A stretch of DNA of 64,000 nt from assembly GCA_000708835.1 (NCBI GenBank), contig DF237073.1:1-64000 (forward strand). Reading direction: 5' to 3'. The notes beneath the pieces are model-generated. The model ran no database searches, was not told where the DNA came from, and was given only the letters and a program-made list of their open reading frames with translations. Source of the DNA: Klebsormidium nitens (lineage: Eukaryota > Plantae > Klebsormidiophyceae). Below, one piece after another: positions 11,701 to 48,744 of this stretch; position 1 is the first letter of the stretch; the number at the start of each line of letters is the position of its first letter. A program made the position numbers and the translations under genes.

Positions 11701-14233
11701 TCATGTCGCTTCGAAGGCACAGCAAGGGCTTCAGCCGCGGCTCCTCCAAATTTAGAGGAGTGACCAGACACCAGAAGGTACAAGCCCGATCTCCCTGAGA
11801 ATGGCGCTATTTGTTATGAAAGTGTTGTGATTGTCAAGCTGCAAGACACAGAGACCTTTGTTTCTGCCAGTCTACATTTTCGAAGCTTTCTTAAGGTAGG
11901 GAACGCTGCACTGACAGAATTCGATGTTCGAGAACAGGCTTTCCCTCAGCATTGACCCCGTGTCTTTCTTGTGCGTCTATAGGGACGGTGGGANNNNNNN
12001 NNNNNNNNNNNNNNNNNNNNNNNNNNNNNNNNNNNNNNNNNNNNNNNNNNNNNNNNNNNNNNNNNNNNNNNNNNNNNNNNNNNNNNNNNNNNNNNNNNNN
12101 NNNNNNNNNNNNNNNNNNNNNNNNNNNNNNNNNNNNNNNNNNNNNNNNNNNNNNNNNNNNNNNNNNNNNNNNNNNNNNNNNNNNNNNNNNNNNNNNNNNN
12201 NNNNNNNNNNNNNNNNNNNNNNNNNNNNNNNNNNNNNNNNNNNNNNNNNNNNNNNNNNNNNNNNNNNNNNNNNNNNNNNNNNNNNNNNNNNNNNNNNNNN
12301 NNNNNNNNNNNNNNNNNNNNNNNNNNNNNNNNNNNNNNNNNNNNNNNNNNNNNNNNNNNNNNNNNNNNNNNNNNNNNNNNNNNNNNNNNNNNNNNNNNNN
12401 NNNNNNNNNNNNNNNNNNNNNNNCTTGTGCGTCTATAGGGACGGTGGGAAGCCCGCATCGGTCAGCTGCAGGGGAAGAAGTACATGTATCTCGGGCTGTA
12501 CGACACGGAGGAGGAGGCCGCGGCAGCATACGACCGGGAAGCCATCAGGTGAAAACATTTGGCATTAATATCCCTTGTTTTAGCGAGGTGGATGCAACCG
12601 GCACCTTCTCTCTACTGGACTAGAATTGATAGGCCGTAAATCACGCGCCTCTGGTCCATCCGAAACGTCCTGACAACTCTCGCTCGGCTCTTCCAGGCAG
12701 AAGGGCCATCATGCCGTCACCAACTTCGACATCTCGCTGGTACGTTCCAAAACTCAGAGCACCGTCTGCAGCCTTTGCATCCCAAACAAAATTCTCGCCA
12801 GCTTTCGATTTCCCAGTGTTCGCAGCACTCGTTTCCTAGTGTACATTTTGAGTAGACAGCATCCTTTCTCAATGCTTTCTGGCCGACTTATTTTTTCGAC
12901 TTCTTCTTCCCCCCTGTCTTAGTGCCCCGCTCCTTGTGCTTTTCTTTTTTCGCTCGCGCTCTTTCGTTACTGACCTGCATTCAAGCCCGCTTACCGCCAG
13001 GTACTCCGAATTGTGTCTTAAAGCTTCTCGGAATTTCAGAGGTACTGAAACCCGCGCTTACCGGCCAGTACTCGCAGCTCCTCTCCCAGCAAGCCTCCCA
13101 GGCGGTGCAACGTCAGCAGGAGCAACAGCGCGCTCAGAGCCTTCAGCCCCCCCCATTTGCGCCACCCCCCCACGCCCAGCTGCCGCCCACTTCGCCCCCC
13201 TCCCTCCAAGCCTCGCCCCGATACGCGCCCCCCCGCGCGCGCACTCCCCCCTCCCGCCCGCACAGCTCCCCCCGCCAAGTCCGAAGCCCCAGCCTGCGCA
13301 GCCCGGGGGCCTCCAACCGACTGCGGCCGCAGGCCTCCTCCCCAACGTTTTCCCTCAGCGCCGCGCTCGGGCAGACGCCCCCCGGGAGCCCTCCCTACCA
13401 CCGGTCACAATCGTGGCCCCGGACGCAGCCGTTGAGCGGCCCCTACGTGGGCCTCGGGGGGTTCGCCCCGGTCGGCCCGCAACCCTCAGCTGCCGTACCC
13501 GCTGACGTGTCCTTGGAGCAGGCGGCTCTTTGGCGGTCGGTTTTCGGTCAGCCCGGTGGCGCGCACGTGGGCTGGGGCAACGTGCCAATGCCTCAGCCCA
13601 GTCCATCCGAGTTTCAGCCCGGGGCCATGCCACCACAACAGCGGCCAGCCAAATTGGTCGCAAGGCGCGGGCCGGTAGAAGCTCCGCCACTGGCTGCGGG
13701 CAGCCCCCCCCTTGGCAGCGGCGGCGGCACAGGAGGGGCGCAGCCGGTGCCCCAAACCGAGGTGGAGAGTACCCGGCCAGGCCTGGCTGCTCGAAGAAGG
13801 ATGCTGCGAAGGTGACTCTGAACGACGCACTATATCACAGCCTCTTGGCGGCCCATAGCCAGGAAGTGTGCCTTTTCAACTTTCCTTGCAATTCATCGAG
13901 ATTTACTGATGATCCTTGCAAATCCTCGGAGAACTTCGACTGAACGTATGCGCCGGACCTGTTGTGGTTTCCAAGCTAGGCGTTTCTTTGTGTCACTACT
14001 TGCAAAGTAACTTTGTTAGATCTCAAAGTGACATACGTTCTCAATTCGGCAGGCGGAAGATGGCGCTCTCCCAGATGTACCATCAGCAGCGGCAAATCGA
14101 CGACCTCGAACTGGTTGCTCCAGCGGAGCAGTCCCTCCAATCACAGCCCTCGCCTTATCCAGGCCAAGAACAGCCACTAGAGCAAGAACACCTGCAGGGG
14201 TTAGGAGGCCTGCATCCTTCGAGCTACGAGTGA
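8727..14233 (+). CDS. AP2-subfamily transcription factor with two AP2 domains
   Basis: Repeat 1: [20 protein letters not shown](E)[35 protein letters not shown], from exons 10656-10800, 10988-11028, 11235-11280, 11432-11493. Linker and repeat 2: [68 protein letters not shown]...[10 protein letters not shown], from exons 11677-11787, 12439-12548, 12697-12739, 13069-13811. The last exon is 14053-14233. The N-terminal low-complexity exons (8727-8871, about 9150-9912, 10287-10450) are less certain. Confidence 0.93.
11994..12423. other. Assembly gap (430 N) with the same 26 bp on both flanks
   Basis: cttgtgcgtctatagggacggtggga occurs at 11968-11993 and again at 12424-12449. Confidence 0.95.
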
Positions 14234-19749: not shown

Positions 19750-22700
19750 TCAATGAATTGTAGAACCATCGGGTAGCTCCTCGACGAAAACGGGGCCTGA
19801 TGACGTTACGAGAGGCTTGCCAGCGAAATGTGCGTGCCCGCCTGCATTCGAGTACGACACATGTCACTCACCCAACAAGGCTTTGCAGCCGATGAATTGC
19901 ATTGGCCACCCTCGAAAGGCCAAACAGATTCCTGCCAGAATAATCACTGAACAACAATCCTTTGAAAAGTCTCCCTAACGGCTGCACATCAGTCCCTCCC
20001 AACCGGAAGCAGGCAAGACAACACAACACGCTCTTTTGAACCTCAAAGGAAAATGTTCGAAGTGGCTTCAATGTGATCGGTGTCTTTTCAAAGGACACGG
20101 GATGTTCGTGGCGAAATAGACACAGGGAGTGCGTGGGTGCCGCACAGCCTGCAACACGGCCTACGTGGTGCTCTAGCACTTTCTTAGGGCCGGGGGCTGA
20201 CCTGGGTGCAGCTCCGGCCCGGGGTAAAGAATGTGCGGACAGAATGTCCATTTTAGGTTTGGAATCATCAGCCCTGAACCCCAAATTCTAAAAAGGACGC
20301 GGACAAGCCGTTTGAGGTCGCCCAACAGAAACGACTGGTCACTGTTTTAGAGCCGCTCGTGAGTACCGGTACTCCAACTTTTTGTACGGGCAAAAAGCAA
20401 ACGTCCGAAGTCAGAGTAGAACCGCAGAATTCCGCGAATGGAGAGCAAGCCAAGAAAGGTCCAGACGCCGGGAATACACTCATAATCATCTGAAATTAGC
20501 GAAACAGCAAATGCGCTATCATCAAAAAAGTCAACGCGAGGACTCACCTCTGATCGTCAACAGAGGAACCATTTTCTCCCATACTTTCGAACTCAACTTC
20601 TTGTCCGGACTGTCACTCGGAACACCCCCCTGCAGTGAATGAAACGGAATGAGTGCTCCAGCATCAGAGAAGTGTCATCATAGCACCAGTCACAGCAAGC
20701 GCCAAGTGATACAGATATACGAAGGAGCCCTGCAAAACTTGCCCCAGTCTAAGATACGCCTAAATCGTGTCAAAGAAGATCACATAACTCGTAAGAGCTA
20801 GGAGCACGTTTCATGTGAGCGACTGAGTGATCAAGGGCCTCCCTTACCTCTAGGAATACGCGATCCCCGATGGACGACGACACTGCAGGCTCCAGTACCT
20901 GCAAGGAAAGGACGAAGTCAGAAGAGAGATTCTGAAACAGTGCCACAACCAGGTTGCAAACGAGAGGAAAAAAGGGCTTTTAGCCTTGTCTCTGAGCGTG
21001 GCCTAATTCCCACAAGGAACTTCGTCACAGTCTGTAACCTTTGAGAGGGGAAGTGCTGAAGAGCACACATCGAATCGCAGCACTCAATCCATCATAGACG
21101 TGCCACCAACCCACCCGTCTGCCTTAAAAGCCTTTACACCTTCCCTCCTCTGAAAACCCAGCCCTGTAATGGCACACAGCAGAGCCCTACCTTCACTTTC
21201 CGCTGGTCATCCTTCTCGTCCGTCCCCGCAGCCAGCGGCCCCTCCCCCGCCAGAATCATCGCCTCGCTAGCCACCCCACCCAGCTTGGCCGGCTTCAGAT
21301 TTAGGATCAAAACCACCAGTTTCAGCAGCAGGTCCTCCTTCTTCACGTGCTTCTTCAGCCCCGCAACCACTTGGCGCATCTCCCCCGGCGCAATCTCGAC
21401 CTTGACCACTATGAGCTTTTCGGAGTTGGGGTGGTCCTCGATCTCCGTGACGCGCCCGACTTGGAGCCACGCCTTGGAGAAGTTTTGCTCATCTCCGGGG
21501 GAGAGGCTAGAGGATGGGCCTGCACAAGGAAAGGGGACTGCTGTTCAGAAAGGTTCAGAATACACAACGAAACAAGAGAAATTGTTCAAATGCACGATAG
21601 ACATTCTGCTCATTTTCAATCTAGAACTGGTTTATGGGCCTGCTGAAACAAGGTGATTCACTGTCCAATGGCTGTGCCTGTGCAGCAGAACGACTGAGAC
21701 AGGCCCTGCTTCTGTGAGTAGAGCAGGGGTGCAAGTGCAGAGAAGAAGAGAGGATCAAGGTGAAAACAGGAAAGGGCGTCACTGGACCCTTACAGAGAGA
21801 CGCAAGTTTCTTAACCAACATAGAACCAGTGTTACATCAGCAACCACTGAGACCAGCGACAGCGGTGTATGATTTGGCATCTCAATAAGCACCAATGCGT
21901 TTAACCTTGACCAATGGGTCAAACCTTGACAAAGTGGCTCTGCAGCTTCAAGCTGACCCTTTTGAGAGAACGACCTGAATCCTCTTTTAAAAGCTGACGT
22001 GCACAAGCCCTGATAATCGTCCCACCAGTCAGCCTTGCTTTCAAGGTGCATATCAGCAATCGCTTATAATGCATCAAGGCCATTTTGTAGCAATCAAATA
22101 GCAAGGTTGGGGCCGACAAACCTGGCTCAGCGCTTGGGTCCGGAGTGCCAGCAGGATGCACGTGCGTAGACGGGTCTGCATGCGCCTTGTCTGAAACCCC
22201 GCCAGGGGGGACAGGGGGCCCCACAATCGCAGGAGCGTCACTTGTCGCCGGCTTCAGCACGGTCAGGCCGCCTGAAGGGGAGGCCGCAGCAACCTGGATT
22301 ATGAATGGTGCTCATTCGATTAGTGGTGAAATGCCTGATGGCTGAGTGGCTAAATCCTGTGTGGATGAGAGGTAAGATGCTTGACTACAGAGAGGTAAGC
22401 GGCTTCCATGTTTGATTAAGGGGTGGTGTAACATAATCTGGAGTGCTAAATTGCCAAGGACATGTGGTTCAGCAACAGTAATGAAGTCAACATGTTGACA
22501 CCAAACGGCTCTGCCAGGCTCAGGCCGCACAATTGTAGGAGCGCTGAGAAGATAGGAATGCAACCCAGGAAGAACATCGATAGCCGCTCGCGCTTCGTTG
22601 AACAACATAGCCAGTCAGACAGCATGGTAATCATGGTCCCAGTGGTAATGGTGTCTGGTGGCAATGTGTAACCTACGAGGCAATATTTCCCAGCCATGGG

Positions 22701-23108: not shown

Positions 23109-25418
23109 GGCGCTCTGGGTGGTGGTGTGTTCTGCTTTGAAGACTTTGAAGATCAAGGAGGAGGCTCACATTATCCACCTGCATACGCGGACCGCTTGGA
23201 CCGGATATCCACTTAAGGCCACCCGAAGGTTAAGCAGACCGAATATGAAAACTGTGGGTTTAAATAATACTGGAATGTAGCTGCGTACCTTTGAAATTGA
23301 ACTGGTTTGTTAACCAACGTATAAGCAGAAAATCAAAGCAAGCATACGACAATCTATCACAGATTCTCGTCCAAAAGAATAGCAGGACCTGACTCTGACT
23401 CTGGCAGAGGTTGCAGAATCAGATTTACATCAAAACTGAGAAAGAAGCCACCCTTTTCACGCATCACGGGGTGGTGATATACTTCGCTTGCATTTCAGCT
23501 CAGAAGGAACGGGTCTCTAAATTCAGCAGCTGGACGTACAGATGCAAGCGGAGGCGCCCACATTCCGGCCGGTGAGGAACGACGCATTGCCGGGTTGCAG
23601 CTTTCACTGCATTGTTTCTGCAATTGTTTGCTCATAAAACAGGGATCTCAAAGTGCGTCACTCTGTTTACCTCCACTGCAACGCAGCATTGCGTTTCACA
23701 TTTGGCCTCAGTACCAGAAAATGATGACTTGGAGCTTCGTCTTCGCTTTGGAAGTTGTTGTTGTCTTTGGAAAGAGAAGCCCGTTCGAAAAACAAGGTCT
23801 TGAAGTGTCAGACAGAGACTTCAGCATTTCTACCACTGGTGGCATGCTTATTTGCGCGCACGTGTGGATGCAGGACGTGCTACATGAGCTCTTCAAACTG
23901 GTCTGGGAAGAAACTGCAAAGGGTGAGAAACTTCTGGCCAGCAACTGATGTTTGCCACTCAAGCACGTCATTTGATTGCCCCGCAACTCGTAGTTCCATC
24001 AATAGCTGATAAGGTTGCCATGGAAGAAAGACACCAGGGAGACTATGTCAGTGAAGCAATGTGAGATGAAACTCAGGTCTGATTCTAGTCATGGAGTGCC
24101 TCAGAATATGGAGGTCCTTCTTTCGCCTTTCCAATAAGCATTAGTTTCTGTCCTGCCATCAGAAGTAGAGGAAGCGGAGGGTGCGCCAGGAGAGGAGACC
24201 CCGGCCGCCGCGGACATTTCCAAGAAGAAGAGAAACACTACAGGCAAGGCCGTGCGAAATCCTTAGCCCTTATAACTCCCCCTTTTTTGCCCTACTACTT
24301 TGTAGGTTGTTAGTCTTACAAGTACCTCCAGTGTTGACGCTGTCACCGTCTCCTCAAGCTCTGAGTTGAAATCTGTTGCATGGACCCTGTGCGATTGGTA
24401 CCAGCTCAGCCGTTGATAGCTCACAGGGGTGGGGTAAGAATTGGGGGCTAAAGCTTTGTTAAAGGGTTCGAGCAGAATGGTCGACAGTGCAAAGCTTTAC
24501 GTTACAGGTTCTTAAAAGCACATTTATTGGAACTCATTTGAGATGCCTCGGTGATCTCAAGCCAATCAGTCTGACCATGCAGCAAACGCACACGCACTCC
24601 GACTGAGCTGCGAGCTCTTGAGGCTGCTCATTGCCGGTGAGGAACTCTTCCTTTCACTGTCGGCACTCACTTGTCGCCGGTTTGGGTTTCAGACTGTGCC
24701 ATCTTTCAGCGTTTTTGCATAGAGGATTCACCGAATAAGTTGGTCGTTCTAGCTGAGTTCTGCTCAAGGGACCTGGCTCTCTGCCAAACAAACAGTGATG
24801 TGAGAGGAGTGGAACTCGTCGGTAAAAGCAAGGTCCTCTCAAAGCCAGCCGTTTACAATCGTTTCACCCATGACGATGACTTATTGTGCCAGAGCCCTCC
24901 TACTCTGCTCAAATGAGTCGTCCTTAGTTAGTCGGTAGGATACAACTTCGGGTTAATTGGGCAACTTTAGAAGGAAGTCGTCATCTTTCCCTTCACTCTG
25001 TTGAAGAGATTGGGAGGGGCACAGATTAGACCACTTAGACCTTAAAGCGCCACAGTGACGTGTTCTGTTCACCAATTGCAGAAGCGGTGGGGAGGGCGGC
25101 CCTGGTTGCGGAAGCCGAGGGACAAGATTGCATCGAAGGCAGCCACCTCGAGCGCATCTTACCACAGCTGCTTCTAGACTTCTGAGCCCCCACTCTCCAC
25201 TGAGGCCGTCTCCAGCAGCAGCTACCAATCCTGGGGCTTCACGTATTGTTGGATAACACGCCCTCTTCCGGGTTCAGAGCAGGTGGTCGTTGACGCATTG
25301 ATCGATGATAGAAGATACTGTGCAACTAACGTTGGGGCCGAAGTGAAGTTGCGGGGGAGACAACTAGAGAGACGATGTCGAGCAGTCGGCGCTTATGTCA
25401 TAAGAGCAGTCCCTGAGC

Positions 25419-28108
25419 ATGACGTCCCCCCGGTCGGTCACCGTAAAAGAAGGCGACAACTTGTGGCGCATCGCCGAGGACCTCGGCGTCAGCTGGGACG
25501 CACTGCGGAAGGCCAACGCTGACGTCACTCATGACGTCATCCAGCCTGGCACCGTCCTCCGAATCCCCCAGCCTCCGCCCCTGGACCCCCCTGAAGCCGT
25601 CGAGGTCGGGGAGGGGGATAGCTTATGGACGATCGGGCAGCGGTGGGGGGTGGACTGGCAGCAGCTGAAGCGGGCGAACGAGCTCGAGGATGACGTCATC
25701 ATGCCGGGCGAGGTGCTGCGGATACCGAGGGGGGAGGGGGGCGTGCGCGGGTGGGTCCAGCGGGCGGTGAAGCGGATAGCGGGCCAGCGGACCAAGCCGG
25801 TGACGGTGCGGGAGGGGGACACCGCGTGGGACATCGCGGCGCGCTTCGGGATCACCGTCACAAAGCTGCAGGTAGTTGTTTCAGAATTCAGGGTTTCATA
25901 GTTGCAGGAAATGAATCGCTCAGCATACCGGGTCTGCGGAGGTTCGTGGGGGTCACGTGCTCATTGAAAAGTAAAGGAGGTGCTTCATAGACTTTTTGAA
26001 ACTCGTTCCCGTCGTGGGTACTTCTGTCTTGTACATGGCAACCGCAGACCGCACATATTTTCTTGCCGATCTTCCGTTGACCCTTTTCGAAAACACACTG
26101 CTGGTCGGAGGCTCTCAGCCGAGGTCCTGAGAATCGCATTTTCTTGCAACCGTAGGCCTTGCCTCGTTTGTGGGGAAGGAAAGAACAGCAAAATATAGAT
26201 CTACTTTGACGAGAGAAACAGTCCTCCCGTGTTCCTTTGCGCAGGCCCTGAACCACGGGCTGTCGCTGGACGCCATCTTCCCGGGAGACGTGGTCCTGGT
26301 GCCTCACTCCGCGCTCGATCGCGCCCAATGTTTCCTGGGGCTCGCCCCGCGCCTCGGGCCACTTCAGCGCGCCGATCCAGACAACCCGGCGTCACCCTTC
26401 GTCTTGGCAGGCCCCCTTCACAGCAGCGAAGAAGGTACGTTCACCAAGGGGGGCTGCACACAACGATGAGGAGGAGCAAGGGACGGTTGCATGCTATTGG
26501 CTGACGCAAACTTTAATCCGTGAGCTGCGCCAGAGTCCCCACTGCCGTGAAAGTTTGGATTCAACGGATGTCGCGTTGACGTGATGCGGGTACGATCGTT
26601 GATGCAAATTCTCGTCCGATCCAAAACGTGCTCACTCCGTCTGCTTTGCATTCGTCAATGCCTTATTTGACCCTCAACTCCAATTTTGACATTAGCTTGG
26701 CCGGCGCCTCCTTTCGATGTAAGAAGCAGCGTCACCGCTGGTTCTTACACCTCGCTGGCGCTGCGCTGTGCAGCCATCGCTCGGATGCGGCAGCGGCACC
26801 GCAAGTTGCTCAACGGCATCCGGCACGTCGAGAGCAGCTTCCTCATGCCGGCGCCCGTTGGTGACGACGGCTTTAGCATCGGACCGCTGCAAATAAGGTA
26901 AAGCTCTCAATTGGATGGACAGGGATTTCCTCCTTGGTTGCCGATGACCGTGTGATGGCTTTCCGGTTTGGTAAAGTGCGTGCTGTGTTTCCCACCGAAA
27001 GTGATTCTGGGAGCGGGAGTAGCGAACTGGAAGGTTTGGGAGAGCGAGCTTGGCTCATGTAGCGGCCGTCAGCCGTAGAGCTAGGAGAAAGCATTCCGCC
27101 AGTCCCATTTTCGACTATCTTGGCGGCGGTGAGACTGTTCAAATCGCCATTGAGGGGTCGCAGCCCACTTCCAAGTCCTCCGAAAGAGGTTCGAGGGAGG
27201 TTCTTGGCAGAGGGTAAGAGAACATAGATTGCGTAGCAGGCGTTTCCTAGAGCGTTCCATTGTGCTTTTTGACAGAAACCCCGTCATAGCCCCGACGCTT
27301 TCTGTTTCCCAGCAAGGAGTACCACATGGACGCGTGGTGGCTGGAGCAACTAGACGCGGCGCACTATGCGCGCGTGGACGAGGTGGAGCACGCGGAGGCG
27401 ACGGCCATCCAGTACTGGCTGCGCTACTGCCCGTGGGCGCTCGACTTCGGGGACTACCAGACGCTCGCGCGCATCCACAATGGGGGGCCCGCCTTCTACG
27501 AGAACCTCAAGACCACCAACTACTGGTGAGCACTATGTATAACGCGATTTGAATGGGATACGAATATCGTAAAAAGTCGGCTGTCTGGAGAAGCTGCAGA
27601 AGGGGGAAAGGGAGTTAAATCTTGCGGCGCGCGAGCCTCAGTCCGAGCAAGCGTTGCAGGCGCCTCCGGGCTTCGTCGCTTACGTTGTTCGTCCTTGAAT
27701 CAACTGGCGCTTCAATAGAATTTGAGATACGCTCCCTGCGTGGCGCAATCAAATTCGTGCAAAGTCGTTGACGTTGCACGTCATGTGTTTGAGGTGTTTC
27801 TTCGTAAAGCCGGAGCGGGTGATACTTGGCACTCTTCGGTACCTCGAGCGAACGTTCAACGGCCGTCGATCCGCTTGCCAACTGTAAGCACGTCCATGTC
27901 TCGCAGGCGGCGGGTGCAGAGCGGGCTTAGAAAGTACGGCTATCGGGAGCGGCCCAAGTTCTACGACTTTCTGCACGAGCCGGCGTCGCCCGACCGCAGA
28001 GCGAAGCAGCTGCGCCTCGAGGCGCCTCTTCTGGGGCTTGTCCTCTCGCCCCTCCTGCGGCGGCCCAAGAAGACGGACGAGCAACAAGGCCCACAGGGGG
28101 GATCTTGA
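25419..28108 (+). CDS. Three LysM domains plus a C-terminal lysozyme-like (i-type/lytic transglycosylase-like) domain
   Basis: Exons 25419-25871, 26245-26434, 26696-26897, 27313-27525 and 27907-28108 have GT-AG boundaries and matching phases. LysM repeats: VTVKEGDNLWRIA..., VEVGEGDSLWTIG..., VTVREGDTAWDIA...IFPGDVVLVP. Catalytic-like region: LLNGIRHVESS...PVGDDGFSIGPLQISKEYHMDAW...YWLRYCP...YQTLARIHNGGP...TTNYWRRVQSGL. The 5' end may be incomplete, because a possible acceptor lies just before the ATG. Confidence 0.88.
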
Positions 28109-29579
28109 GTTGCAAGAGCCTGGGTGTTTTGAAATGTTTTGAAAGTGGACGACTCTGGCGGTAAAAGTCAAAAGAAAAGTTTGAGTGCGTCGTGTGTAGC
28201 TTTTCTGGGTGATTCTTATCTTATCTTATCTGGATGTAAGGATGGTGGTCAAGACAGGGTCGCAAAGATCCGGGATCACGTCTGACATTTTGCAATCCGG
28301 TGTCCATGAAGCGACTTGAGGCAGTAGTGGGGCGTTACTTGCCCTTTAGTGGAGGTCGGCCAAAAGAGTCCATTTCCGACTTCATCGCTGAGGAATGTTG
28401 TCTTAAAAGGTTTGGAGCTGTAAACTCTATGTAACGGCATCATTTCTGCACAAGCAATACGCAAATGGATACCGCTCATATGTGACCGGTGTCTAGCAGG
28501 GTCGCCGGAGGGAAAGCCTATTTGATGACTACCTAGCACCACGTGGCGGACACGGTTAACCATTGTAATATGCAGCATTTGTGATTCTGCGTATGTGATC
28601 GAGCCAAATTACTTAAAAAAACGCCACTCCTGGCCTCTTCTATTTTGAATTCTGATTGAACCGGAAATCTATTGCACATTTGGATGCTTACTAATTATGT
28701 TATGCATGAATTTACCATCAAGTTCAATCATATGCTGTTGACATCCCCTAGGTTGGACTAGATTAGCTAGGCTTAGCGCACGCTCAAATTCGATAAGGTA
28801 GCTAGGCGCTCGGAACTCAAACATTGATTCTTATCTATGCCATGGAAGCCTATGGCCCGTGTGGCTACGGCGTTTGAAAAGAGAACATCATGCATGCTAC
28901 TTAACGGCAGCATGATTAGATGCATACATGGGCTATAGGCTCACGACTGTGTAAATGTTTTTCTAATATATATACATTGCACTGCATAATATACGTACAT
29001 GTCACGGTTCTGTGTGCGTTGTCCATGATACAGGGAAGGACCGCAACCACTAAATTTGACAATCCAGCATGGATACAACTAACGGCAGCACGCCAGCTAC
29101 TGGTCACGGTCCTACGCCTCTGAAATTCTAGCAACGTGCAGCTAAAGAATCGTGCCACGATTCGCACCGCTTGTCCTGCGATTTGACGCTTGCTGTGCCT
29201 ATACCTGTGCCTGTGGTTTTCGCAAAAGACAAACCCTTCACCTTGAACCATCGGAGCCACGTATTGTCAACCTTATGGTCGGTCTGACTAGCCTGGCGTC
29301 GAGCTTTTACAAAGCGGTGCATATGCGACTGCCCCTTAAGGATTGCAGAGGAGATCCCGGTTCCCCCGCAACTCAAAAACCACACCTCGCCAGACTCTTT
29401 CACTAAGGCAGGGCCCTTCAGAAAAGACCATCCCCCCACGTGGCTCTCTGGCGACACCCAGTCCCTGAACCGTAACTAAGAGTCGCCTGCGGACTTTATA
29501 GCACGTGGCTTCGTAAGCAAACCTCAGAGCGGAGCCTCAGCAGATTGGTCGTTCTGGGACCGGTTCCCCGACGCCCTCT

Positions 29580-32500
29580 TCAGGGCCCAGCCCCCCCTGA
29601 TTGCGGCGGCCAGTCCAAAAACTTCCTGCCCACCAATGATGGAGGCATGTACTCTTGCTCCGGCTCCTCCGCTTGACCGGGCGGGTAAATGTAACCCTTG
29701 CCGTAACCCAGTTGCCTCATGAGCCGGGTGGGGGCGTTGCGCAAGTGGAGAGGTACCGGCTCGTTCTGCCCGGTTGATGCCACCGCCTCCTGGGCGGCCT
29801 GTATGGCGCGGTAGCAGGCGACGGACTTGGGCGCCAGCGCGAGGTAGGCGACGCACTGCGCCAGGCACACGTCGCACTCGGGCATACCTAAGAAAAGGAA
29901 CAAATGGTTAGAGTCCCCATGGAGTCTGGTCATGGTAGAGATCGGAAGGATATCCAAAAGACAACGAAGGCGACAGGAAGGAAATAAGCAGCGGTGTGTG
30001 TGCGGATCGCACCGCGTACATGTATCCGTGGCAACATTGGAATCTGCACACAGTTCTAGGTCTCGAAATGAGGTGAGCCCAACCAGCGATACTAAATACG
30101 AGCTTCATATTGAAGACAACAGCCACGAAAGAAGGAGAGTATGAAGCGTATTATGAAAAGAAACAATCCGACTTCGAAACAAACAATACCACCAAACAGC
30201 ACTAGGGCGAGATGACAGAACAATGCACGGAAGATAGCGAAGTTGAGGTCTGACGTCGGGACCTGGTTAATTCAGTGGCTTTGAATCGCAGATATCCAGT
30301 GCTCGCAAGTAGCCTCTCCGCGTCAAGTGCAAGCCCATCTGGGCTCCATACGACGAAGTCGTAGCAGCCCAAGTTTGGTCGCCACACGCGTATGATAGAG
30401 CTCATTTGCGCTCACCGAGAAAGTGGCACGCCTGGTACGCCGCGACCGCCTGCGGCAGCGCGTTCGGGTCCGCCAGCCCGACGTCCTCGCTCGCAAACCG
30501 TACCAGCCGCCGCGCGACGTACAGCGGCCCCTCGCCCCCCCGCAGCATGCGCGCCAGCCAGTAGAGCGCCGCGTCTGCGTCCCCCCCCCGCATCGACTTG
30601 TGCAGCGCGCTTATGACGTTGTAGTGCTCCTCGCCCGTCTTGTCGTACAGCACGTGCGACCGCTGCAGCGCCTCGCTGACGTCAGCGAGGCTGATCACCA
30701 CGGGGCCGCCGACGTCAGCTTTCCGGGGAGACGAGTCGGTGGCACGCTGGGGGCCACTTTCCCCGGGCTTTTCCTCCCCCCCGCCGAGGCTCGACTTCCG
30801 CAGCGGCTCCGAGCTCGCTCGCCCCGACGGCGGGACCCCTTCTGCGTCCCAATGCTGCCACGGAAACTCCGCTCCTTCCACCGGACTCCCGAACGGACCG
30901 TCCGTCAAACCCGCCGAGACTTTCGACGGTAAAGCCCCCCGGCCGGACGGGGAGACGGGAGAGGCCGATTCCGGCCCGCTCGAGGCTCCCGCAATCTCGC
31001 TTAACGGCCCAGCCTCTCGCCTCCGCCCTCCCACTTGCGACGCCCTCTCGAGCGCCGCCCCTGCGGCCATCTCGAGCGCGTTCAATGCCGCCCGAGCATC
31101 TCCGTCTGCGGCTCCCGCTAAGAAGTCGATCGCTGCCTCCTCTGCCGCGAACCGCGGCTTCTTCTCCGGAACGTCGCCGCTCGTGGGCGCGGAGGGCCCT
31201 GTTTCGGGGGCGCGTTGCAGGGACTCCAGGCTGGCCAGGCCCCGCGCCTCGTCCGACAGGGCCCTCTGCAGGACGGCCTTGATGTGCTCCGGCTGGAGCT
31301 TGCTGAGCGTGAAGACGCGGCACCGCGAGAGGAGCGCCGCGTTGAGCTCGAAGGAGGGATTCTCGGTGGTGGCGCCGATGAGGGTCACGTCGCCCGCCTC
31401 GACAGCGGGCAGAAAAGCGTCCTGTAGGGGGAAAGACGGGGTTAAGTGGTGGCGCTTTGCTGATGGTGAGGACTCGTCCTCGGTTGTTCAGAGTGGGCGA
31501 ACCAACCGCCTTCGAACTTCAAGGGGGCCTCTGTTGGTGGGAGTGCTAGCATCAGGTGAGTGAGTATGTGAAGTTTGACAGCAGGTCGACCAAGTTCTCG
31601 ACCACATCGAGACGATAGCAGGCCGAGGTATGTGGGCTCATTTGAGGAGCAAGCCCAGCAATTTTAGAGCCGCTATTCAGAGGCCAGCTTTGCAGGTGAC
31701 TACTATACACATCAAGAAAGACAAGATTGAACAAACGAGATTACCACCAATGAAAAGGGAGATATTACGACACTTTGGAACAAAACTAGCATCAAGATAT
31801 ATCCGTAAACATCCTGTATCTCTATCCTTATCCTTAAACCTGCCCGGATGGCCTTTCCGAACGCTACCACGACTGCGTCTCGAAAAATCTCCAGAGTATG
31901 AACCGAACCTTTTATTGTACGGGAAACATGTTTTGGAGCAATCACGAAGCAATCAAGACGATCTGGAGCCAAGCAGATGGCCCCACCTGTTGGCTCTTAT
32001 TGAATCGGTGCGTCTCGTCCACAAACAGCAGTGTGCGCTGGCCCATCCGCCGCGCGTTCTTCGCCGCCTCCAGCACTTCCCTTACTTCCTTCACACCTGC
32101 CGTCACGGCCGACAGCTGTACAAACCTGCTCGAAACCTGTCTGGCAATAACCCTCGCCAGCGTCGTCTTCCCGCTCCCCGGGGGCCCCCAGAAGATCATC
32201 GACGGGACGGCGTTGCTCACGATCAAGCTCCGGAGCATCGTCCCCGGACCCACGAGCTGCTCCTGCCCCACCAGATCGTCCAGAGTCTGCGGCCGCAGTC
32301 TCTCTGCCAGGGGGGTGAACTTTGCCTGCTTCTTCGGGGGGGTCACGAGGCCCTCGAGCGGCGCGAGCTTCGCCGGGGGGGGTTCCAACCGCTGGAGTTT
32401 TGCCGGCCGCCCCTCTGCTTCAGCCCCCCGCCGCGCCCAAAGGGACGCCTTTCCCCTATCGTCTGGGTCCGCCGAGGCCGCTCGTTTCGCAACTGGGGGG

Positions 32501-45227: not shown

Positions 45228-48200
45228 ATGGCGGCGCCAATGCAGAATGGTGCTGGCGAAGCAGCAGGCAATGCTGAAGCACCTATGTTTGTCGGCATGA
45301 ATGAGCCGCTGGAGAGTGTCTTTGCGCGGTTGTTGGAGCACTTGGAGCGGAGTGGGCCGCTCAGTGGACGGCGAAGCCATTGGATCGATCTGCTGAGACA
45401 GGACATGCCCAGCTTGGATCGAAAGCAGAAGATTAAGACTACTTTCAAACTGGACGAGTTCCGGGAAGAGTTGGAGTCAGCATCCTCACAGGACGTCCGC
45501 CTCTTGGCAGACTCAGGATTCTTCAAGGTTCTCTGCGCGTGTCTCCGGGATGCCGATGCAGAGACTTTGGCATGTGCGACAGAGTGCCTCGGGCACTGCA
45601 TTAGGATTGTCCCTGAACTAATTGAGAAGGCCTGGGCATGGGGTGCTTTGAGGCCCGTAGCCACACTTATTTTGAAAGACTGGGAGGTGGCGGACGAGCA
45701 GGCTCTTTATTATGACTTGCCCCTTCAGCACTCCCTTTACTTTCTGGCGACCCTAGGAGGGCCCTGCAACTACGAACAGTTGCGGTGCTCGGAGGAAATA
45801 TGCGAGATCAGTAGGAAGTGCCTGAATTGGTTGAATAAACAGGGCGTGCAAAGGAGAGCTGCTGAGATGCTGGTGGCGCTGTCCAAAGCAAAGGCAGAGA
45901 GCAAGGACGGAGATGACTACCTCCCCTTTGTTTTCAACGCCACCTTAGTTCTCATGTTTGGTTCACATCCTTCGCTCCACTCAAAGGGGCGGCCTGGTGC
46001 CAGGCTGGAAAGTCAGGAGGGTAAGCAGGCTGCGTGATTCCCAGCAGAAACTCTGAGGAGAGACCTTCTCAGAAAACTGACCTCAGTGTTACATCCGTCA
46101 ATTTTCCAAACTCTGTATTTCCGTCAATCTTGCTAAACTTAGTGAATACATTCCTCGGAGTCATGACCTTGGAAGCTGTGAGCGTGAGTCGAGGCTGGGG
46201 CTTTGCATAATGACAACATATTGCTTCTCCCTACCATGTGAAGTTGCATTTCTTTTCAATCAGTGCATCTCATATTTTCTTGGGCAACGTACTGCTTGCT
46301 TCAGAGCCAGCAACATACCACAAGTCTATGGATGCAACAGGATGTCACAAACTGACTCCACGAACTTATTGCAATTGTTCCTTGTCCCTCAGGGCTGGGG
46401 GCCGCCGTGCTGCATTTCATTCAACTGTCCGGGAATCCAGAGTTTATGGAGCGCCCAGAGCCCCGCGGGATCGTAGAGAACAGCACCAAGCTCCTCCTCC
46501 TGCTTTGGTTGCCCTAGTGAGTGCTCAGAGGTTTTCTCGTCAATACCCACTAGTGTTGGTTCCTTCAAGTCGTCTTGTTTACTCTTCCGGATGAGCAATA
46601 CCAATTCAAAAGATTCTTTACATTCTTAAGAGTCAACAACAGCACCAGTGGGCCCTCTGGCGTTTGGAAACGTGTCGTTTTCCACATGTTTAGCAACCTG
46701 AATTCATCATGTAATAGATGGGGGAATTCTTATCAGCTTTCGAGGCTTCTTTCCAAGCAAAGTATTCTTCTTTCAACACCCTGGTTTTAAGCAGCTTACA
46801 ATGAGTTTGTCAGGCTACTCCGATCTCAATAAGTCTCTCACCTGGGGCTGAATCTGACTTGGAAACCATGCAGCAGCCACTTAGTTGCCTGGAAGAAGCC
46901 CTTGCCAGTGGCTTATTGTCGAATCTCGGTGTATCTTCTTTTCAATTACCTGCAGCTCGAGCGCCACCGACTCAGATGCTCTCAGGACGCGGAAGAAAGA
47001 GATTGCTGAGCACCCCGACATTCTCAAGGTCGCCCAAATCCTGAAGGAAGAGGCGGAGTCACAAAGCCATCCCGTGAAGGAAGTGAGCTGCTTTTACTGA
47101 TCGAGAATTTCCTTTCTGAAACTCCCATGTTGAACTGTTTTCCTTCCGTACCTAGATAAAACTTGCAACAGATGGTCAGGGTTGTTGAACGCTAGAAGAT
47201 ACCGATGCGGCTTGTCTAGGTGAGAAAGGAACGGTGTCAACGATCCAGGTGTTTTCGTCCTCCAACATAATAGTCCTGTGCAAGATCATCCGCTGTCTGA
47301 GCCGAAGTTGTACGTCGTTTGGAACACTTTGGAGACACTTCACCGGTTGCAATTGACCAACAAATCAGCTTGCCTCAATAAAGAACCGTTCAAGTCTGAT
47401 GAACGGAAGACCGCCAAGATTTGAATGTCCAAACAAGTTCAGGTCCAATTTCCCACCTTTTGCCGAAGTGTTCGTGAAGTACTGTTGACATCAAGCCGCT
47501 CTTGAGTCCTTCAGGACGTCACCGTCACCCTGGCTAAAGAGGCTGGTAGACTTCGACACAATTTTCTTGTGCTCAGAAGTCAGGGACCGATCTCTGATCC
47601 CCATTCTCTGCCACACTTGCAGTCCACAAAGGCCTGCTTCGCGGCCCTCGTCTGCCTCCTCACCTTCGAGCACCCGCGGCCCCTTCCGCGCGCGACCCTC
47701 GAGAGCGCTCTGCGCATTCTGTGCAATGCTGACGTCAGCGCGGACTGGCTGAGCTGGGACCGATGGAACGTCGTCCTGAACCGCCGGTTCCACGACAACA
47801 CCGTCTCGCCAACGTTCCTCCTGACCCACTTCTTCCCTGCTTTCCTCACCGCGTTCGCCGTCGAGGCCAACCGCTGCAAACCCGCCCGCATTTACGGCCC
47901 CGGTTTGCGGAAGCTCTTCGGCATGGTCGTGTTCCTATCCGGCTGCCTCTGGTTCTCCTACTGCCCGTTGCCGATGTCGTGGGGGACGCCGACCGGCAAG
48001 GAGGCAATCGTGATTCCCAAGGAACTGCTCCCCCGGTTGGTGGACCTCATGATCGAAACTAGAGCGGCCGCTGCGATGGCGTCCCTCACCGGCTTCGCGA
48101 TGTATCGGACGGCGGGGGAGGCGTGCGTGGGGCTGGCTCAAACGGCGGTACAGATGTCGCTCGCCACTTTGAGGCGCTTGAACGAGCAAATGATCCCGGC

Positions 48201-48744
48201 GCTGTTCCACGTCTCGCTGGACGTCTCCCGGGACGACGAGATCATGTGCCTCGCTCGGATGGGCCGTCCGTCGTCCTGTACGGACGAGCTCGTGTCCGGC
48301 ATGCCGGTATTTAAGGTCGAGGTTCTTGGTGCGGACAGCCACGAAGCAGACACCGTAAGGTATGTTTGGGCGCGGAACGTGGTCGAGATCAGTGCCGATG
48401 TGAAGCGTCGAAAAGCAAAGGTTCTCAGCCAGCTAGCGGTTGACATGCGTAGGATAGAGGACGTGCCACTCGTGTGGGAGCTTGACAAAGATGAGCAGCG
48501 GAGATTAGCAATGTTCAATAAGGATCGTCGGGGAGTGTTAAGTAGGCTACACGCGCGACCGCAAGCCGTTGACCCAAGTCATGGAACTGGGCACGGCAAA
48601 GATTCAAGGTGTGCCTCCTGCAGACTTGTCTTGACCAAAGCTAATTTAAAACGCTGTTCAAGGTGCCGTGCCACTACTTACTGTAGCGTTGCGTGCCAAA
48701 AGAAGGACTGGTCTGAACATAAGAACACTTGCAAAAAGACGTGA
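45228..48744 (+). CDS. Large helical-repeat-like protein with a C-terminal MYND zinc finger
   Basis: Exons 45228-46020, 46393-46507, 46956-47082 and 47623-48744 are phase-compatible. The C-terminus is CASCRLVLTKANLKRCSRCRATTYCSVACQKKDWSEHKNTCKKT*. Confidence 0.85.

What the first reader, a model, noticed from the sequence alone, without database searches (positions are those of the whole stretch)
25419..28108. Intron-containing 3xLysM plus lysozyme-like gene: candidate algal peptidoglycan hydrolase
Seen: three complete LysM repeats are spliced to a domain with a catalytic-type Glu (IRHVESS), a GD-G-SIGPLQI motif, YW, LARIHNGGP and T-x-x-YW-x-x-V. The C-terminus has a hydrophobic stretch followed by basic residues (APLLGLVLSPLLRRPKK). 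Four spliceosomal introns show the gene is resident in this eukaryote and not contamination. Knowledge: LysM binds peptidoglycan or chitin. The ES...GPxQI...YW...ARIHNGGP signature is typical of invertebrate-type lysozymes and related bacterial/phage lysozyme-like proteins, not plant GH18/GH19 enzymes. Mosses and some streptophyte algae retain a plastid peptidoglycan wall, and LysM-containing DipM acts in its splitting. Inference: this is either an undescribed plastid-wall remodelling enzyme or an antibacterial effector, possibly acquired horizontally and fused to LysMs. No clear signal or transit peptide is visible, but an upstream exon is possible.
Basis: partly seen in the sequence, partly recalled or inferred. 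Interest (0 to 1): 0.85.

Follow-up and report, generated by a model that had tools for sequence, protein, structure and literature searches.

The report
Algal LysM-tagged invertebrate-type lysozyme gene
A green alga expresses a properly spliced nuclear gene joining three peptidoglycan-binding LysM modules to a cysteine-poor "invertebrate-type" lysozyme domain; the unstudied family is found mostly in green lineages reported to keep a peptidoglycan wall around their chloroplasts, so it is a candidate enzyme for cutting or recycling that wall.

Summary
The gene at 25419-28108 (+) has five coding exons and four GT..AG introns and encodes 393 aa. Assembled transcripts from four studies join every exon exactly as modelled. 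They also reveal a further non-coding 5' exon.

- **No targeting peptide:** an in-frame stop lies 18 nt before the ATG, so no N-terminal extension is possible.
- **LysM region:** three LysM repeats (Pfam E 3e-37).
- **C-terminal domain:** it is homologous to i-type lysozyme/destabilase. A family profile hits all four solved i-type lysozyme sequences at E 2e-9 to 6e-9. An AlphaFold model of the closest orthologue (pLDDT 94) matches leech destabilase best (Z 13.1). The catalytic Glu and Asp are conserved (E234, D245).
- **Age of the gene:** this is not a recent transfer. LysM-lysozyme orthologues occur in other streptophyte algae, mosses, liverworts and lycophytes and in early-branching chlorophytes. 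Ginkgo gave a partial hit. Three introns share position and phase with moss and liverwort.
- **Distribution:** no angiosperm appeared among the named hits. The pattern resembles that of plastid peptidoglycan.
- **Localisation signals:** none was seen in the 16 orthologues examined. None has a presequence or a membrane segment, and the C-terminal "hydrophobic stretch" is not an anchor.

Function is inferred, not shown. My best reading is a LysM-guided muramidase acting on plastid peptidoglycan or its fragments. Defence is the main rival. UniProt already auto-names the orthologues "lysozyme", and I found no study of them.

The parts
24298..24636 (+). Non-coding 5' exon; the transcript start is approximate
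   Evidence: In all four runs, contigs carry 326-332 nt upstream of the junction. The 30-nt loose end maps uniquely to 24600-24629. The donor is CCG|GTGAGG at 24636/24637.
24637..25081 (+). 5'-UTR intron (GT..AG, 445 nt)
   Evidence: Inferred from the transcript contigs. The apparent fit from 25075 with one mismatch is the end of the upstream exon (ATTGCCG) laid over intron letters.
25082..25418 (+). Remainder of the 5' UTR. The total UTR is about 676 nt and holds seven upstream ATGs. An in-frame TAA lies at 25401-25403.
   Evidence: mRNA reconstruction and ORF list; upstream stop.
25419..25871 (+). Coding exon 1 (aa 1-151). It holds LysM1 (about 25440-25568), LysM2 (about 25602-25733) and the first half of LysM3 (from about 25797).
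   Evidence: Pfam LysM E 3.2e-37 with three stretches; NCBIfam LysM-type hits.
26245..26434 (+). Coding exon 2 (aa 152-214). It holds the second half of LysM3 (to about 26301) and the linker.
   Evidence: Splice junctions seen in transcripts; alignment with orthologues' LysM.
26774..26897 (+). Coding exon 3 (124 nt), the first part of the lysozyme domain. It holds catalytic Glu234 (26830-26832), Asp245 (26863-26865) and GPLQI.
   Evidence: Profile alignment to i-type lysozymes places this Glu and Asp on the Glu and Asp of MES...MDMG in the solved chains. The exon is also 124 nt in moss and liverwort.
27313..27525 (+). Coding exon 4, the core of the lysozyme domain (YW...CPWAL...ARIHNGGP...TTNYW).
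   Evidence: 246 homologues with E <= 0.001 in the representative search; Atlas feature search points to phage Destabilase clusters.
27907..28108 (+). Coding exon 5: last helix of the domain, a poorly conserved tail that is probably disordered, and the TGA stop.
   Evidence: Gene model; tail disorder in the moss orthologue model; no membrane segment.
28109..28602 (+). 3' UTR. Contigs end at 28393-28433 in three runs and at 28602 in one.
   Evidence: table 8.

Best explanation
**What is shown.** This is a nuclear, spliced, expressed gene for a soluble 393-aa modular glycan hydrolase. It has three N-terminal LysM modules, a flexible linker, and a cysteine-poor i-type (destabilase-family) lysozyme domain with the Glu/Asp catalytic pair (E234, D245). 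A tail follows that is probably disordered.

**Inferred mechanism.** The LysM repeats hold the enzyme on GlcNAc-containing glycan strands. The lysozyme domain then hydrolyses the MurNAc-GlcNAc bond in the way other i-type lysozymes do.

**Inferred role.** The in-vivo substrate is most likely the alga's own plastid peptidoglycan or fragments released from it, during wall turnover, recycling or splitting at chloroplast division. The family is an old, conserved gene that appeared once per named genome here. I found it in green lineages reported to keep plastid peptidoglycan and did not find it in angiosperms.

**Open point.** No orthologue examined has a presequence or membrane segment. The enzyme therefore probably works in the cytosol or at the plastid surface, or reaches the envelope by a non-canonical route.

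I put the molecular identity (LysM plus i-type lysozyme) at about 0.9. I put the plastid-peptidoglycan role at about 0.4-0.45.
For: **Gene and mRNA.** All four coding introns, plus a 5'-UTR intron, are spliced in contigs of four studies, and single contigs span all exons. Neighbouring genes are ordinary eukaryotic ones.

**Domains.** Pfam LysM scores E 3.2e-37. A profile of the C-terminal domain hits leech destabilase 8bbu and the bivalve lysozymes 3ab6, 4pj2 and 2dqa at E 1.9e-9 to 5.8e-9 over nearly the whole domain. PF05497 Destabilase is matched by 15 of 18 alignment rows.

**Fold.** The AlphaFold model of the closest orthologue's domain has pLDDT 94.1.
- Foldseek's top six hits are all i-type lysozymes (8bbu E 1.6e-4, TM 0.69/0.73).
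- VIA-align gives 8bbu Z 13.1, rmsd 3.0 over 112 residues.
- The nearest predicted Atlas folds are phage Destabilase clusters (TM 0.86).

**Catalytic pair.** The Glu is invariant and the Asp nearly invariant across 76 green, bacterial and phage sequences.

**Ancient vertical gene.**
- The window protein is 38-47% identical over about 290 aa to its best-matching full-length orthologues.
- Named orthologues come from Selaginella, Physcomitrium, Sphagnum, Marchantia, Riccia, Diphasiastrum, Closterium, Mesotaenium, Chara, Mesostigma and Chlorokybus.
- Chlorophyte members come from Picocystis, Chloropicon and Myrmecia.
- Ginkgo gave a partial 164-aa entry.
- The green sequences form one clade with SH-aLRT 96.
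- Three introns share position and phase with moss and liverwort.

**Link to plastid peptidoglycan.**
- No angiosperm appears among the named hits.
- Klebsormidium and moss plastids have labelled peptidoglycan (cited in PMC9434261 and PMC13109935).
- Chloropicon is counted among chlorophytes likely to have the layer (PMC10784329).
- The protein has only 2 Cys and no signal peptide, which fits an intracellular enzyme.
Against: - No enzyme assay, localisation or mutant exists.
- Plastid peptidoglycan lies between the two envelope membranes. This protein has no transit peptide, and neither do the 16 orthologues examined. The N-terminus cannot be extended.
- Loss in angiosperms is a common pattern for many gene families, so the taxon distribution is suggestive only. 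It was read from named database hits, not from a formal survey.
- PMC10784329 reports some seed plants with a full peptidoglycan toolkit, yet no angiosperm homologue was seen here.
- Pfam scores of the plant sequences mostly fall below the Destabilase gathering cut-off.
- Fold and PDB tests used orthologues (56-68% identical in the domain) and exon-wise references, not the window's spliced protein.
- LysM also binds chitin, and i-type lysozymes can have chitinase activity.
Confidence: 0.45

Rival explanations
1. It is a defence enzyme. On this reading a LysM-guided lysozyme/chitinase degrades the walls or wall fragments of bacteria or fungi that contact or enter the cell, or trims microbial glycans for immune perception. 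It would have nothing to do with the plastid wall.
For: The same domain evidence applies. Animal i-type lysozymes are antibacterial or digestive (established knowledge). The nearest non-plant relatives are phage and bacterial proteins that presumably lyse walls. Plant LysM proteins are best known from microbe perception (PMC2728734, PMC9434261).
Against: There is no signal peptide or membrane segment in any orthologue examined, and cysteines are almost absent, so classical secretion is unlikely. The named genomes each gave one orthologue, the active site is invariant, and branching largely follows the species tree. That is unlike fast-evolving, expanding immune effectors. The gene was held, at least in part, by all 20 transcriptome-like runs found, across at least seven studies, which suggests constitutive expression, although the growth conditions are unknown.
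Confidence: 0.25
2. The domain has a different chemistry or no catalysis. It could be a lytic transglycosylase producing 1,6-anhydroMurNAc, or an isopeptidase like leech destabilase acting on gamma-glutamyl bonds. It could also be a glycan-binding regulator or sensor, with the lysozyme fold used only for binding.
For: After the i-type lysozymes, the next structural matches are the lytic transglycosylases MltC (Z 11.3), MltE (Z 10.5) and Slt. Some related Atlas clusters carry PF01464 SLT. Destabilase is reported to have isopeptidase activity (my own knowledge, not checked here).
Against: Both the general acid Glu and the second carboxylate Asp typical of hydrolytic i-type lysozymes are conserved. 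No plant member hits PF01464. Strong conservation of the whole cleft motif set argues for catalysis.
Confidence: 0.12
3. The gene is a recent horizontal acquisition or assembly contamination from a bacterium or phage.
For: The closest non-green relatives are phage and bacterial Destabilase-family proteins.
Against: There are five spliceosomal introns, all removed in RNA, and three have positions and phases shared with moss and liverwort. The flanking genes are eukaryotic. Full-length orthologues with the same LysM-lysozyme architecture occur across the green lineage. The green sequences form one supported clade. tblastn of the orthologue's domain against 50,697 phage records found nothing at E 1e-3.
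Confidence: 0.02

Closest known systems
Animal i-type lysozymes / destabilase (Pfam PF05497; solved structures 8bbu/8bbw leech destabilase, 2dqa Tapes japonica, 3ab6/4pj2 Meretrix lusoria)
   Same: Homologous catalytic domain (profile E about 2e-9). Same fold (Z 13.1, TM about 0.7). Same Glu and Asp positions and the same GP-x-QI, HNGGP and T-x-x-YW-x-x-V motifs.
   Different: The green-lineage proteins have almost no cysteines (2 in the window protein), whereas animal enzymes are disulfide-rich by my knowledge. They have no signal peptide. They are fused to one to three LysM repeats and carry a disordered tail. Identity to the solved structures is only 26-32%. Most score below Pfam's gathering cut-off.
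Phage and bacterial 'Destabilase family' single-domain proteins (130-200 aa, metagenomic)
   Same: These are the closest non-green relatives in sequence (34-47% identity across the aligned rows) and in predicted structure (TM 0.86, rmsd 1.8 over 122 residues). They are likewise cysteine-poor.
   Different: Most of those sampled are single-domain proteins of 130-200 aa, too short to carry LysM repeats. They are encoded in phage-like or bacterial contexts. They fall on the other side of a supported branch from all green sequences.
DipM / NlpD (LysM + LytM/M23 peptidase), required for chloroplast division in Cyanophora and Physcomitrella (PMC4015805)
   Same: LysM repeats deliver a peptidoglycan hydrolase domain. 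The taxon distribution is similar: charophytes, moss and lycophyte, but not seed plants.
   Different: The catalytic domain is unrelated, being an M23 metallopeptidase that cuts peptide cross-links rather than a glycosidase that cuts glycan strands. No M23 hit was found here. PMC4015805 describes DipM as of cyanobacterial descent.
MltD and other family-1 lytic transglycosylases (SLT domain with LysM repeats)
   Same: Lysozyme-superfamily fold with a catalytic Glu in an E-S/T motif (Z 8-11). MltD combines this domain with LysM repeats.
   Different: No PF01464 match in any plant member. The domain order is reversed in MltD. The second catalytic carboxylate is conserved here, which points to hydrolysis rather than transglycosylation.

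Membership tests
i-type lysozyme / Destabilase (PF05497) | Significant sequence-profile similarity to family members across the domain | tested here: met
   The profile of the green-lineage domain, including the window's exons 3 and 4, hits 8bbu, 3ab6, 4pj2 and 2dqa at E 1.9e-9 to 5.8e-9. Destabilase is the only Pfam family matched, by 15 of 18 rows, best E 9.4e-7.
i-type lysozyme / Destabilase (PF05497) | Score at or above Pfam's gathering cut-off (26.2 bits) | tested here: inconclusive
   The window's exon pieces give no hit when scanned alone. In the full-length scan, orthologues score 17.5-26.2 bits and only the Mesostigma protein reaches the cut-off. The spliced window protein could not be submitted because it has no reference.
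i-type lysozyme / Destabilase (PF05497) | Lysozyme-like fold closest to solved i-type structures | tested here: met
   The model of orthologue P0153:156-286 has pLDDT 94.1. The best matches are 8bbu, 8bbw, 2dqa, 4pj2 and 3ab6. This is a proxy, 56-68% identical to the window domain.
i-type lysozyme / Destabilase (PF05497) | Catalytic Glu and Asp about 11-12 residues apart | tested here: met
   E234 and D245 of the window protein align with the Glu and Asp of the solved enzymes. The Glu is invariant and the Asp at least 90% conserved in 76 sequences. The catalytic role of these residues in the animal enzymes is from my knowledge of the literature.
i-type lysozyme / Destabilase (PF05497) | Secreted, disulfide-rich small protein (the animal type) | tested here: not met
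   The protein has 2 Cys and no signal peptide, the LysM starts at residue 7, and an in-frame stop lies upstream. It is therefore a distinct, cysteine-poor subfamily.
i-type lysozyme / Destabilase (PF05497) | Muramidase (and possibly chitinase or isopeptidase) activity | not testable with these tools
   Needs recombinant protein and peptidoglycan or chitin substrates.
LysM domain (PF01476) | Pfam match above the cut-off, repeated | tested here: met
   126.7 bits against a cut-off of 20.9, in three stretches.
DipM / NlpD | LytM/M23 peptidase domain C-terminal to the LysM repeats | tested here: not met
   No M23 hit in the window exons or in the orthologues. The NCBIfam DipM hits cover only the LysM part and fall far below the cut-off.
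SLT lytic transglycosylase (PF01464) | Pfam SLT match, with a single catalytic Glu and no second carboxylate | tested here: not met
   No PF01464 hit in the green sequences. The Asp is conserved. Only fold-level similarity is seen.

The most novel reading that the evidence does not exclude
This family is the missing glycan-strand hydrolase of the green-lineage plastid peptidoglycan system. It would be a host-side LysM-guided i-type lysozyme, lacking any canonical targeting signal, that splits or recycles the chloroplast wall. It would have been lost together with the wall in flowering plants. Knock-outs in moss or liverwort would then show division or wall-turnover defects.
Probability: 0.3. 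Interest if true: 0.8.

Novelty: new variant of a known kind. Interest (0 to 1): 0.55.

Why it matters
Chloroplasts of streptophyte algae, bryophytes and some other green lineages keep a thin peptidoglycan layer that is needed for division. The synthesis genes are well studied. Of the hydrolases, DipM is described (PMC4015805). From memory, MltB and VanY have also been studied in moss.

A conserved gene that pairs peptidoglycan-binding LysM repeats with a muramidase-type domain would be a concrete, testable candidate for cutting or recycling the glycan strands. Its distribution resembles that of the wall. Orthologues exist in Physcomitrium and Marchantia, both tractable by knock-out.

It also shows that the so-called invertebrate-type lysozyme fold has an old, cysteine-poor, apparently intracellular branch in plants and algae, related to phage proteins.

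If the role is instead in defence, it is an unusual non-secreted lysozyme. Either way the domain identity is already visible to automatic annotation, since UniProt names the orthologues 'lysozyme'. The novelty therefore lies in the biology and not in the detection.

Tried and rejected
1. **Exon-by-exon scans.** Pfam and NCBIfam found only LysM. The lysozyme domain is split by introns and each piece is too short. phmmer of exon 4 against PDB sequences found nothing meaningful.
2. **Spliced protein not submitted.** Remote tools therefore received exon references and orthologue ids. The spliced protein was used only in local scripts.
3. **Phage search.** tblastn of the orthologue's domain against the annotated phage collection found no match at E 1e-3. 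Phage relatives were seen only in metagenomic and Atlas data.
4. **Bacterial genome search.** The single protein P0060 found one Verrucomicrobiota MAG.
5. **The window's own protein was not found.** It was not among the database hits. I do not know why.
6. **Literature.** Searches for i-type lysozyme or destabilase in plants and algae returned nothing relevant. The moss peptidoglycan-hydrolase paper (Utsunomiya et al. 2021) is not held. I recall it covered MltB, VanY, NagZ, LdcA and a beta-lactamase-like gene, not this family, but that is memory only.
7. **Readings rejected.**
   - A C-terminal tail anchor.
   - A coding upstream exon.
   - DipM or SLT membership.
   - Contamination or recent transfer.
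8. **Earlier notes.** The search of earlier findings had nothing at this place. By words it gave notes from elsewhere in the genome only.
Full report
**1. Gene structure and expression**

Reading the sequence and testing splice candidates gives one clean model on the + strand. The coding exons are 25419-25871, 26245-26434, 26774-26897, 27313-27525 and 27907-28108. There are four GT..AG introns of 373, 339, 415 and 381 nt, and a 1182-nt CDS of 393 aa. Exons are GC-rich (0.64-0.69) compared with introns (0.49-0.54).

Public runs hold the stretch. Contigs from four runs of four studies were laid on 24900-28700 and skip exactly these four introns. Two single contigs (2156 and 2142 nt) run through all exons. 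Low-depth contigs (2-7 against 61-99) cover some introns. These are probably pre-mRNA or DNA traces.

The same contigs carry 326-332 further nucleotides upstream. The loose end maps uniquely to 24600-24629. The junction is 24636|25082, with a GT..AG intron of 445 nt. The 5' UTR is thus about 676 nt and contains seven upstream ATGs. An in-frame TAA at 25401 lies in the same exon as the start codon.

Flanking genes are ordinary eukaryotic ones: an MgsA/WRNIP1-type AAA+ protein, a tRNA-binding domain, WD40 and zf-MYND. An earlier follow-up elsewhere in this genome calls it Klebsormidium nitens. I did not verify that independently.

**2. Domains**

Exon 1 gives Pfam LysM at E 3.2e-37 with three stretches. 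The third repeat is completed by exon 2.

The remaining exons gave nothing when scanned singly, because the domain is split. A language-model feature search with exon 4 pointed to phage clusters carrying PF05497 Destabilase. A full HMMER scan of 1.84 billion representatives with exon 4 found 246 proteins at E <= 0.001.

The longer hits are full-length LysM-plus-domain proteins. Locally, the spliced window protein aligns to its best-matching full-length orthologues at 38-47% identity over about 290 residues, E down to 1e-89.

A profile of the C-terminal domain (A1: 16 orthologues plus the window's exons 3 and 4) hits the four solved i-type lysozyme sequences at E 1.9e-9 to 5.8e-9. These are leech destabilase 8bbu/8bbw, Meretrix 3ab6 and 4pj2, and Tapes 2dqa. 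The alignment covers the E-S/T motif through to the terminal YW-x-K-V. Destabilase is the only Pfam family matched, by 15 of 18 rows, though mostly under the gathering score.

An AlphaFold model of the closest orthologue's domain (P0153:156-286, 76-row alignment) has pLDDT 94.1.
- Foldseek ranks six i-type lysozyme chains first (8bbu E 1.6e-4, TM 0.69/0.73). MltC, Slt and goose-type lysozymes follow.
- An independent aligner gives 8bbu Z 13.1 (rmsd 3.0, 112 residues), followed by MltC at 11.3 and MltE at 10.5.
- In the ESM Atlas the nearest shapes are phage Destabilase clusters (TM 0.86).

In the window protein the catalytic pair is E234 (26830-26832) and D245 (26863-26865). Across 76 green, bacterial and phage sequences the Glu is invariant and the Asp at least 90% conserved.

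The differences from the animal enzymes are two cysteines only, no signal peptide, the LysM fusion, and a tail. That tail is disordered in the full-length model of the moss orthologue (pLDDT < 50 for residues 275-325). No 19-residue window of the window protein exceeds 1.23 on the Kyte-Doolittle scale, so the C-terminal hydrophobic stretch is not an anchor.

**3. Evolution**

Named orthologues come from these taxa:
- Streptophyte algae: Closterium, Mesotaenium, Chara, Mesostigma, Chlorokybus.
- Bryophytes and lycophytes: Physcomitrium, Sphagnum, Marchantia, Riccia, Selaginella, Diphasiastrum.
- Chlorophytes: Picocystis, Chloropicon and Myrmecia.
- A partial 164-aa Ginkgo entry.

UniRef names several of them 'lysozyme'. 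No angiosperm name appeared in any list.

A quick maximum-likelihood tree of 77 domains puts all green sequences in one clade (SH-aLRT 96). That clade has two subfamilies. One is the LysM family, which includes the window gene and branches roughly as the species do. The other contains long proteins from Selaginella and Closterium, which have the domain near the N-terminus, and a short Mesostigma protein. The 49 short phage- or bacterium-like sequences lie on the other side. The root is unknown, so no direction of transfer can be claimed.

Gene structures recovered from the Physcomitrium and Marchantia loci show that the three introns inside the lysozyme region are conserved in position and phase.

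| Species | Intron 2 (after codon) | Intron 3 | Intron 4 |
|---|---|---|---|
| Window gene | 214.33 | 255.67 | 326.67 |
| Physcomitrium | 139.33 | 180.67 | 250.67 |
| Marchantia | 96.33 | 137.67 | 207.67 |

The middle exon is 124 nt in all three. The fusion and its introns therefore predate the split of Klebsormidium-like algae from land plants, and the fusion itself predates the chlorophyte-streptophyte split. Recent horizontal transfer and contamination are excluded.

**4. Function**

*Shown:* the architecture, the homology, the fold (by proxy), conservation of the catalytic residues, expression, and the absence of recognisable targeting signals.

*Inferred:* LysM-guided hydrolysis of the glycan strand of peptidoglycan, or possibly of chitin.

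For the physiological role, the taxon distribution parallels that reported for plastid peptidoglycan:
- Klebsormidium and moss plastids have been labelled (cited in PMC9434261 and PMC13109935).
- Chloropicon is listed as likely to have the layer (PMC10784329).
- DipM shows the same distribution (PMC4015805).

The gene appeared once per named genome and is conserved, unlike typical immune effectors. That favours a role in splitting, turnover or recycling of the plastid wall.

Against direct action in the envelope, none of the orthologues examined has a presequence. From memory only (Utsunomiya et al. 2021, not held), moss homologues of the bacterial recycling enzymes NagZ and LdcA localise to the cytosol. 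That would make a cytosolic step in wall-fragment turnover conceivable.

The main rival is defence against microbes. Lesser rivals are transglycosylase or isopeptidase chemistry, or a non-catalytic role. I put the molecular identity at about 0.9, the plastid-wall role at about 0.4-0.45 and defence at about 0.25.

**5. Novelty**

LysM-hydrolase fusions and i-type lysozymes are both known. Automatic annotation already labels the orthologues 'lysozyme'. I found no paper describing i-type lysozymes in plants or algae. The 2009 LysM survey of land plants never mentions lysozyme or destabilase.

I class it as a new variant of a known kind: a cysteine-poor, signal-less, LysM-fused green-lineage branch of the i-type lysozyme family. 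It carries an attractive but untested link to chloroplast peptidoglycan.

**6. Limits**

Pfam, PDB and structure tests therefore rest on exon references and orthologues. The run kinds are guesses, although the spliced contigs themselves show an RNA origin. Taxon absence is read from named hits only.

Noticed in passing
window 24298-25418: The 5' UTR is unusually long (about 676 nt), split by an intron. It has seven upstream ATGs opening short uORFs of 2-23 codons, the last ending 3 nt before the main ATG. This suggests translational control.
   Followed up: partly
proteins P0030 (Mesostigma), P0032/P0228-P0230 (Selaginella, 636-833 aa), P0034/P0035/P0235 (Closterium), P0043, P0077 (1356 aa): A second green-lineage subfamily of the same i-type lysozyme domain. 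The Selaginella and Closterium members have the domain near the N-terminus, followed by long uncharacterised C-terminal regions. It is sister to the LysM family in the tree.
   Followed up: partly
orthologues P0151 (Physcomitrium), P0162 (Closterium), P0018: Several orthologues start with MG-x-x-x-S, the usual N-myristoylation consensus. That would tether them to a cytosolic membrane face. The window protein (MTSPRS) does not.
   Followed up: no
window 26489-26705, 26868-27295, 27009-27340, 27593-27879: Low-depth contigs (2-7 against 61-99 for the spliced form) cover parts of introns 2-4 in two runs. They are probably unspliced pre-mRNA or DNA carry-over.
   Followed up: no
cluster of P0017: A EukProt entry labelled Diacronema (Pavlova) lutheri sits in the same 90%-identity cluster as the Picocystis salinarum protein. 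This is probably culture contamination or mislabelling rather than a haptophyte gene.
   Followed up: no
L001-L003 (metagenome contigs up to 176 kb): The short Destabilase-family homologue P0063 sits among many small same-strand ORFs without Pfam hits, next to Metallophos, NADAR and Band_7 genes. The context looks like a phage or large virus.
   Followed up: no
window 30405-31487 (-), 21137-21544 (-), 55135-55653 (+), 47506-48741 (+); N runs near 11990-12430 and 59000-59160: Neighbouring exons encode an MgsA/WRNIP1-type AAA+ protein, a tRNA-binding domain, WD40 repeats and a zf-MYND protein. Two assembly gaps lie in the window.
   Followed up: partly
same genome, other windows: Other first-stage notes list several bacterial-type peptidoglycan-related genes in this genome: Amidase_3, a NamZ-like gene, an AmiE/PBP4B-like gene, NlpC/P60 and further LysM proteins. 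If real, together with this gene they would suggest a sizeable host-encoded peptidoglycan turnover toolkit. I checked none of them.
   Followed up: no
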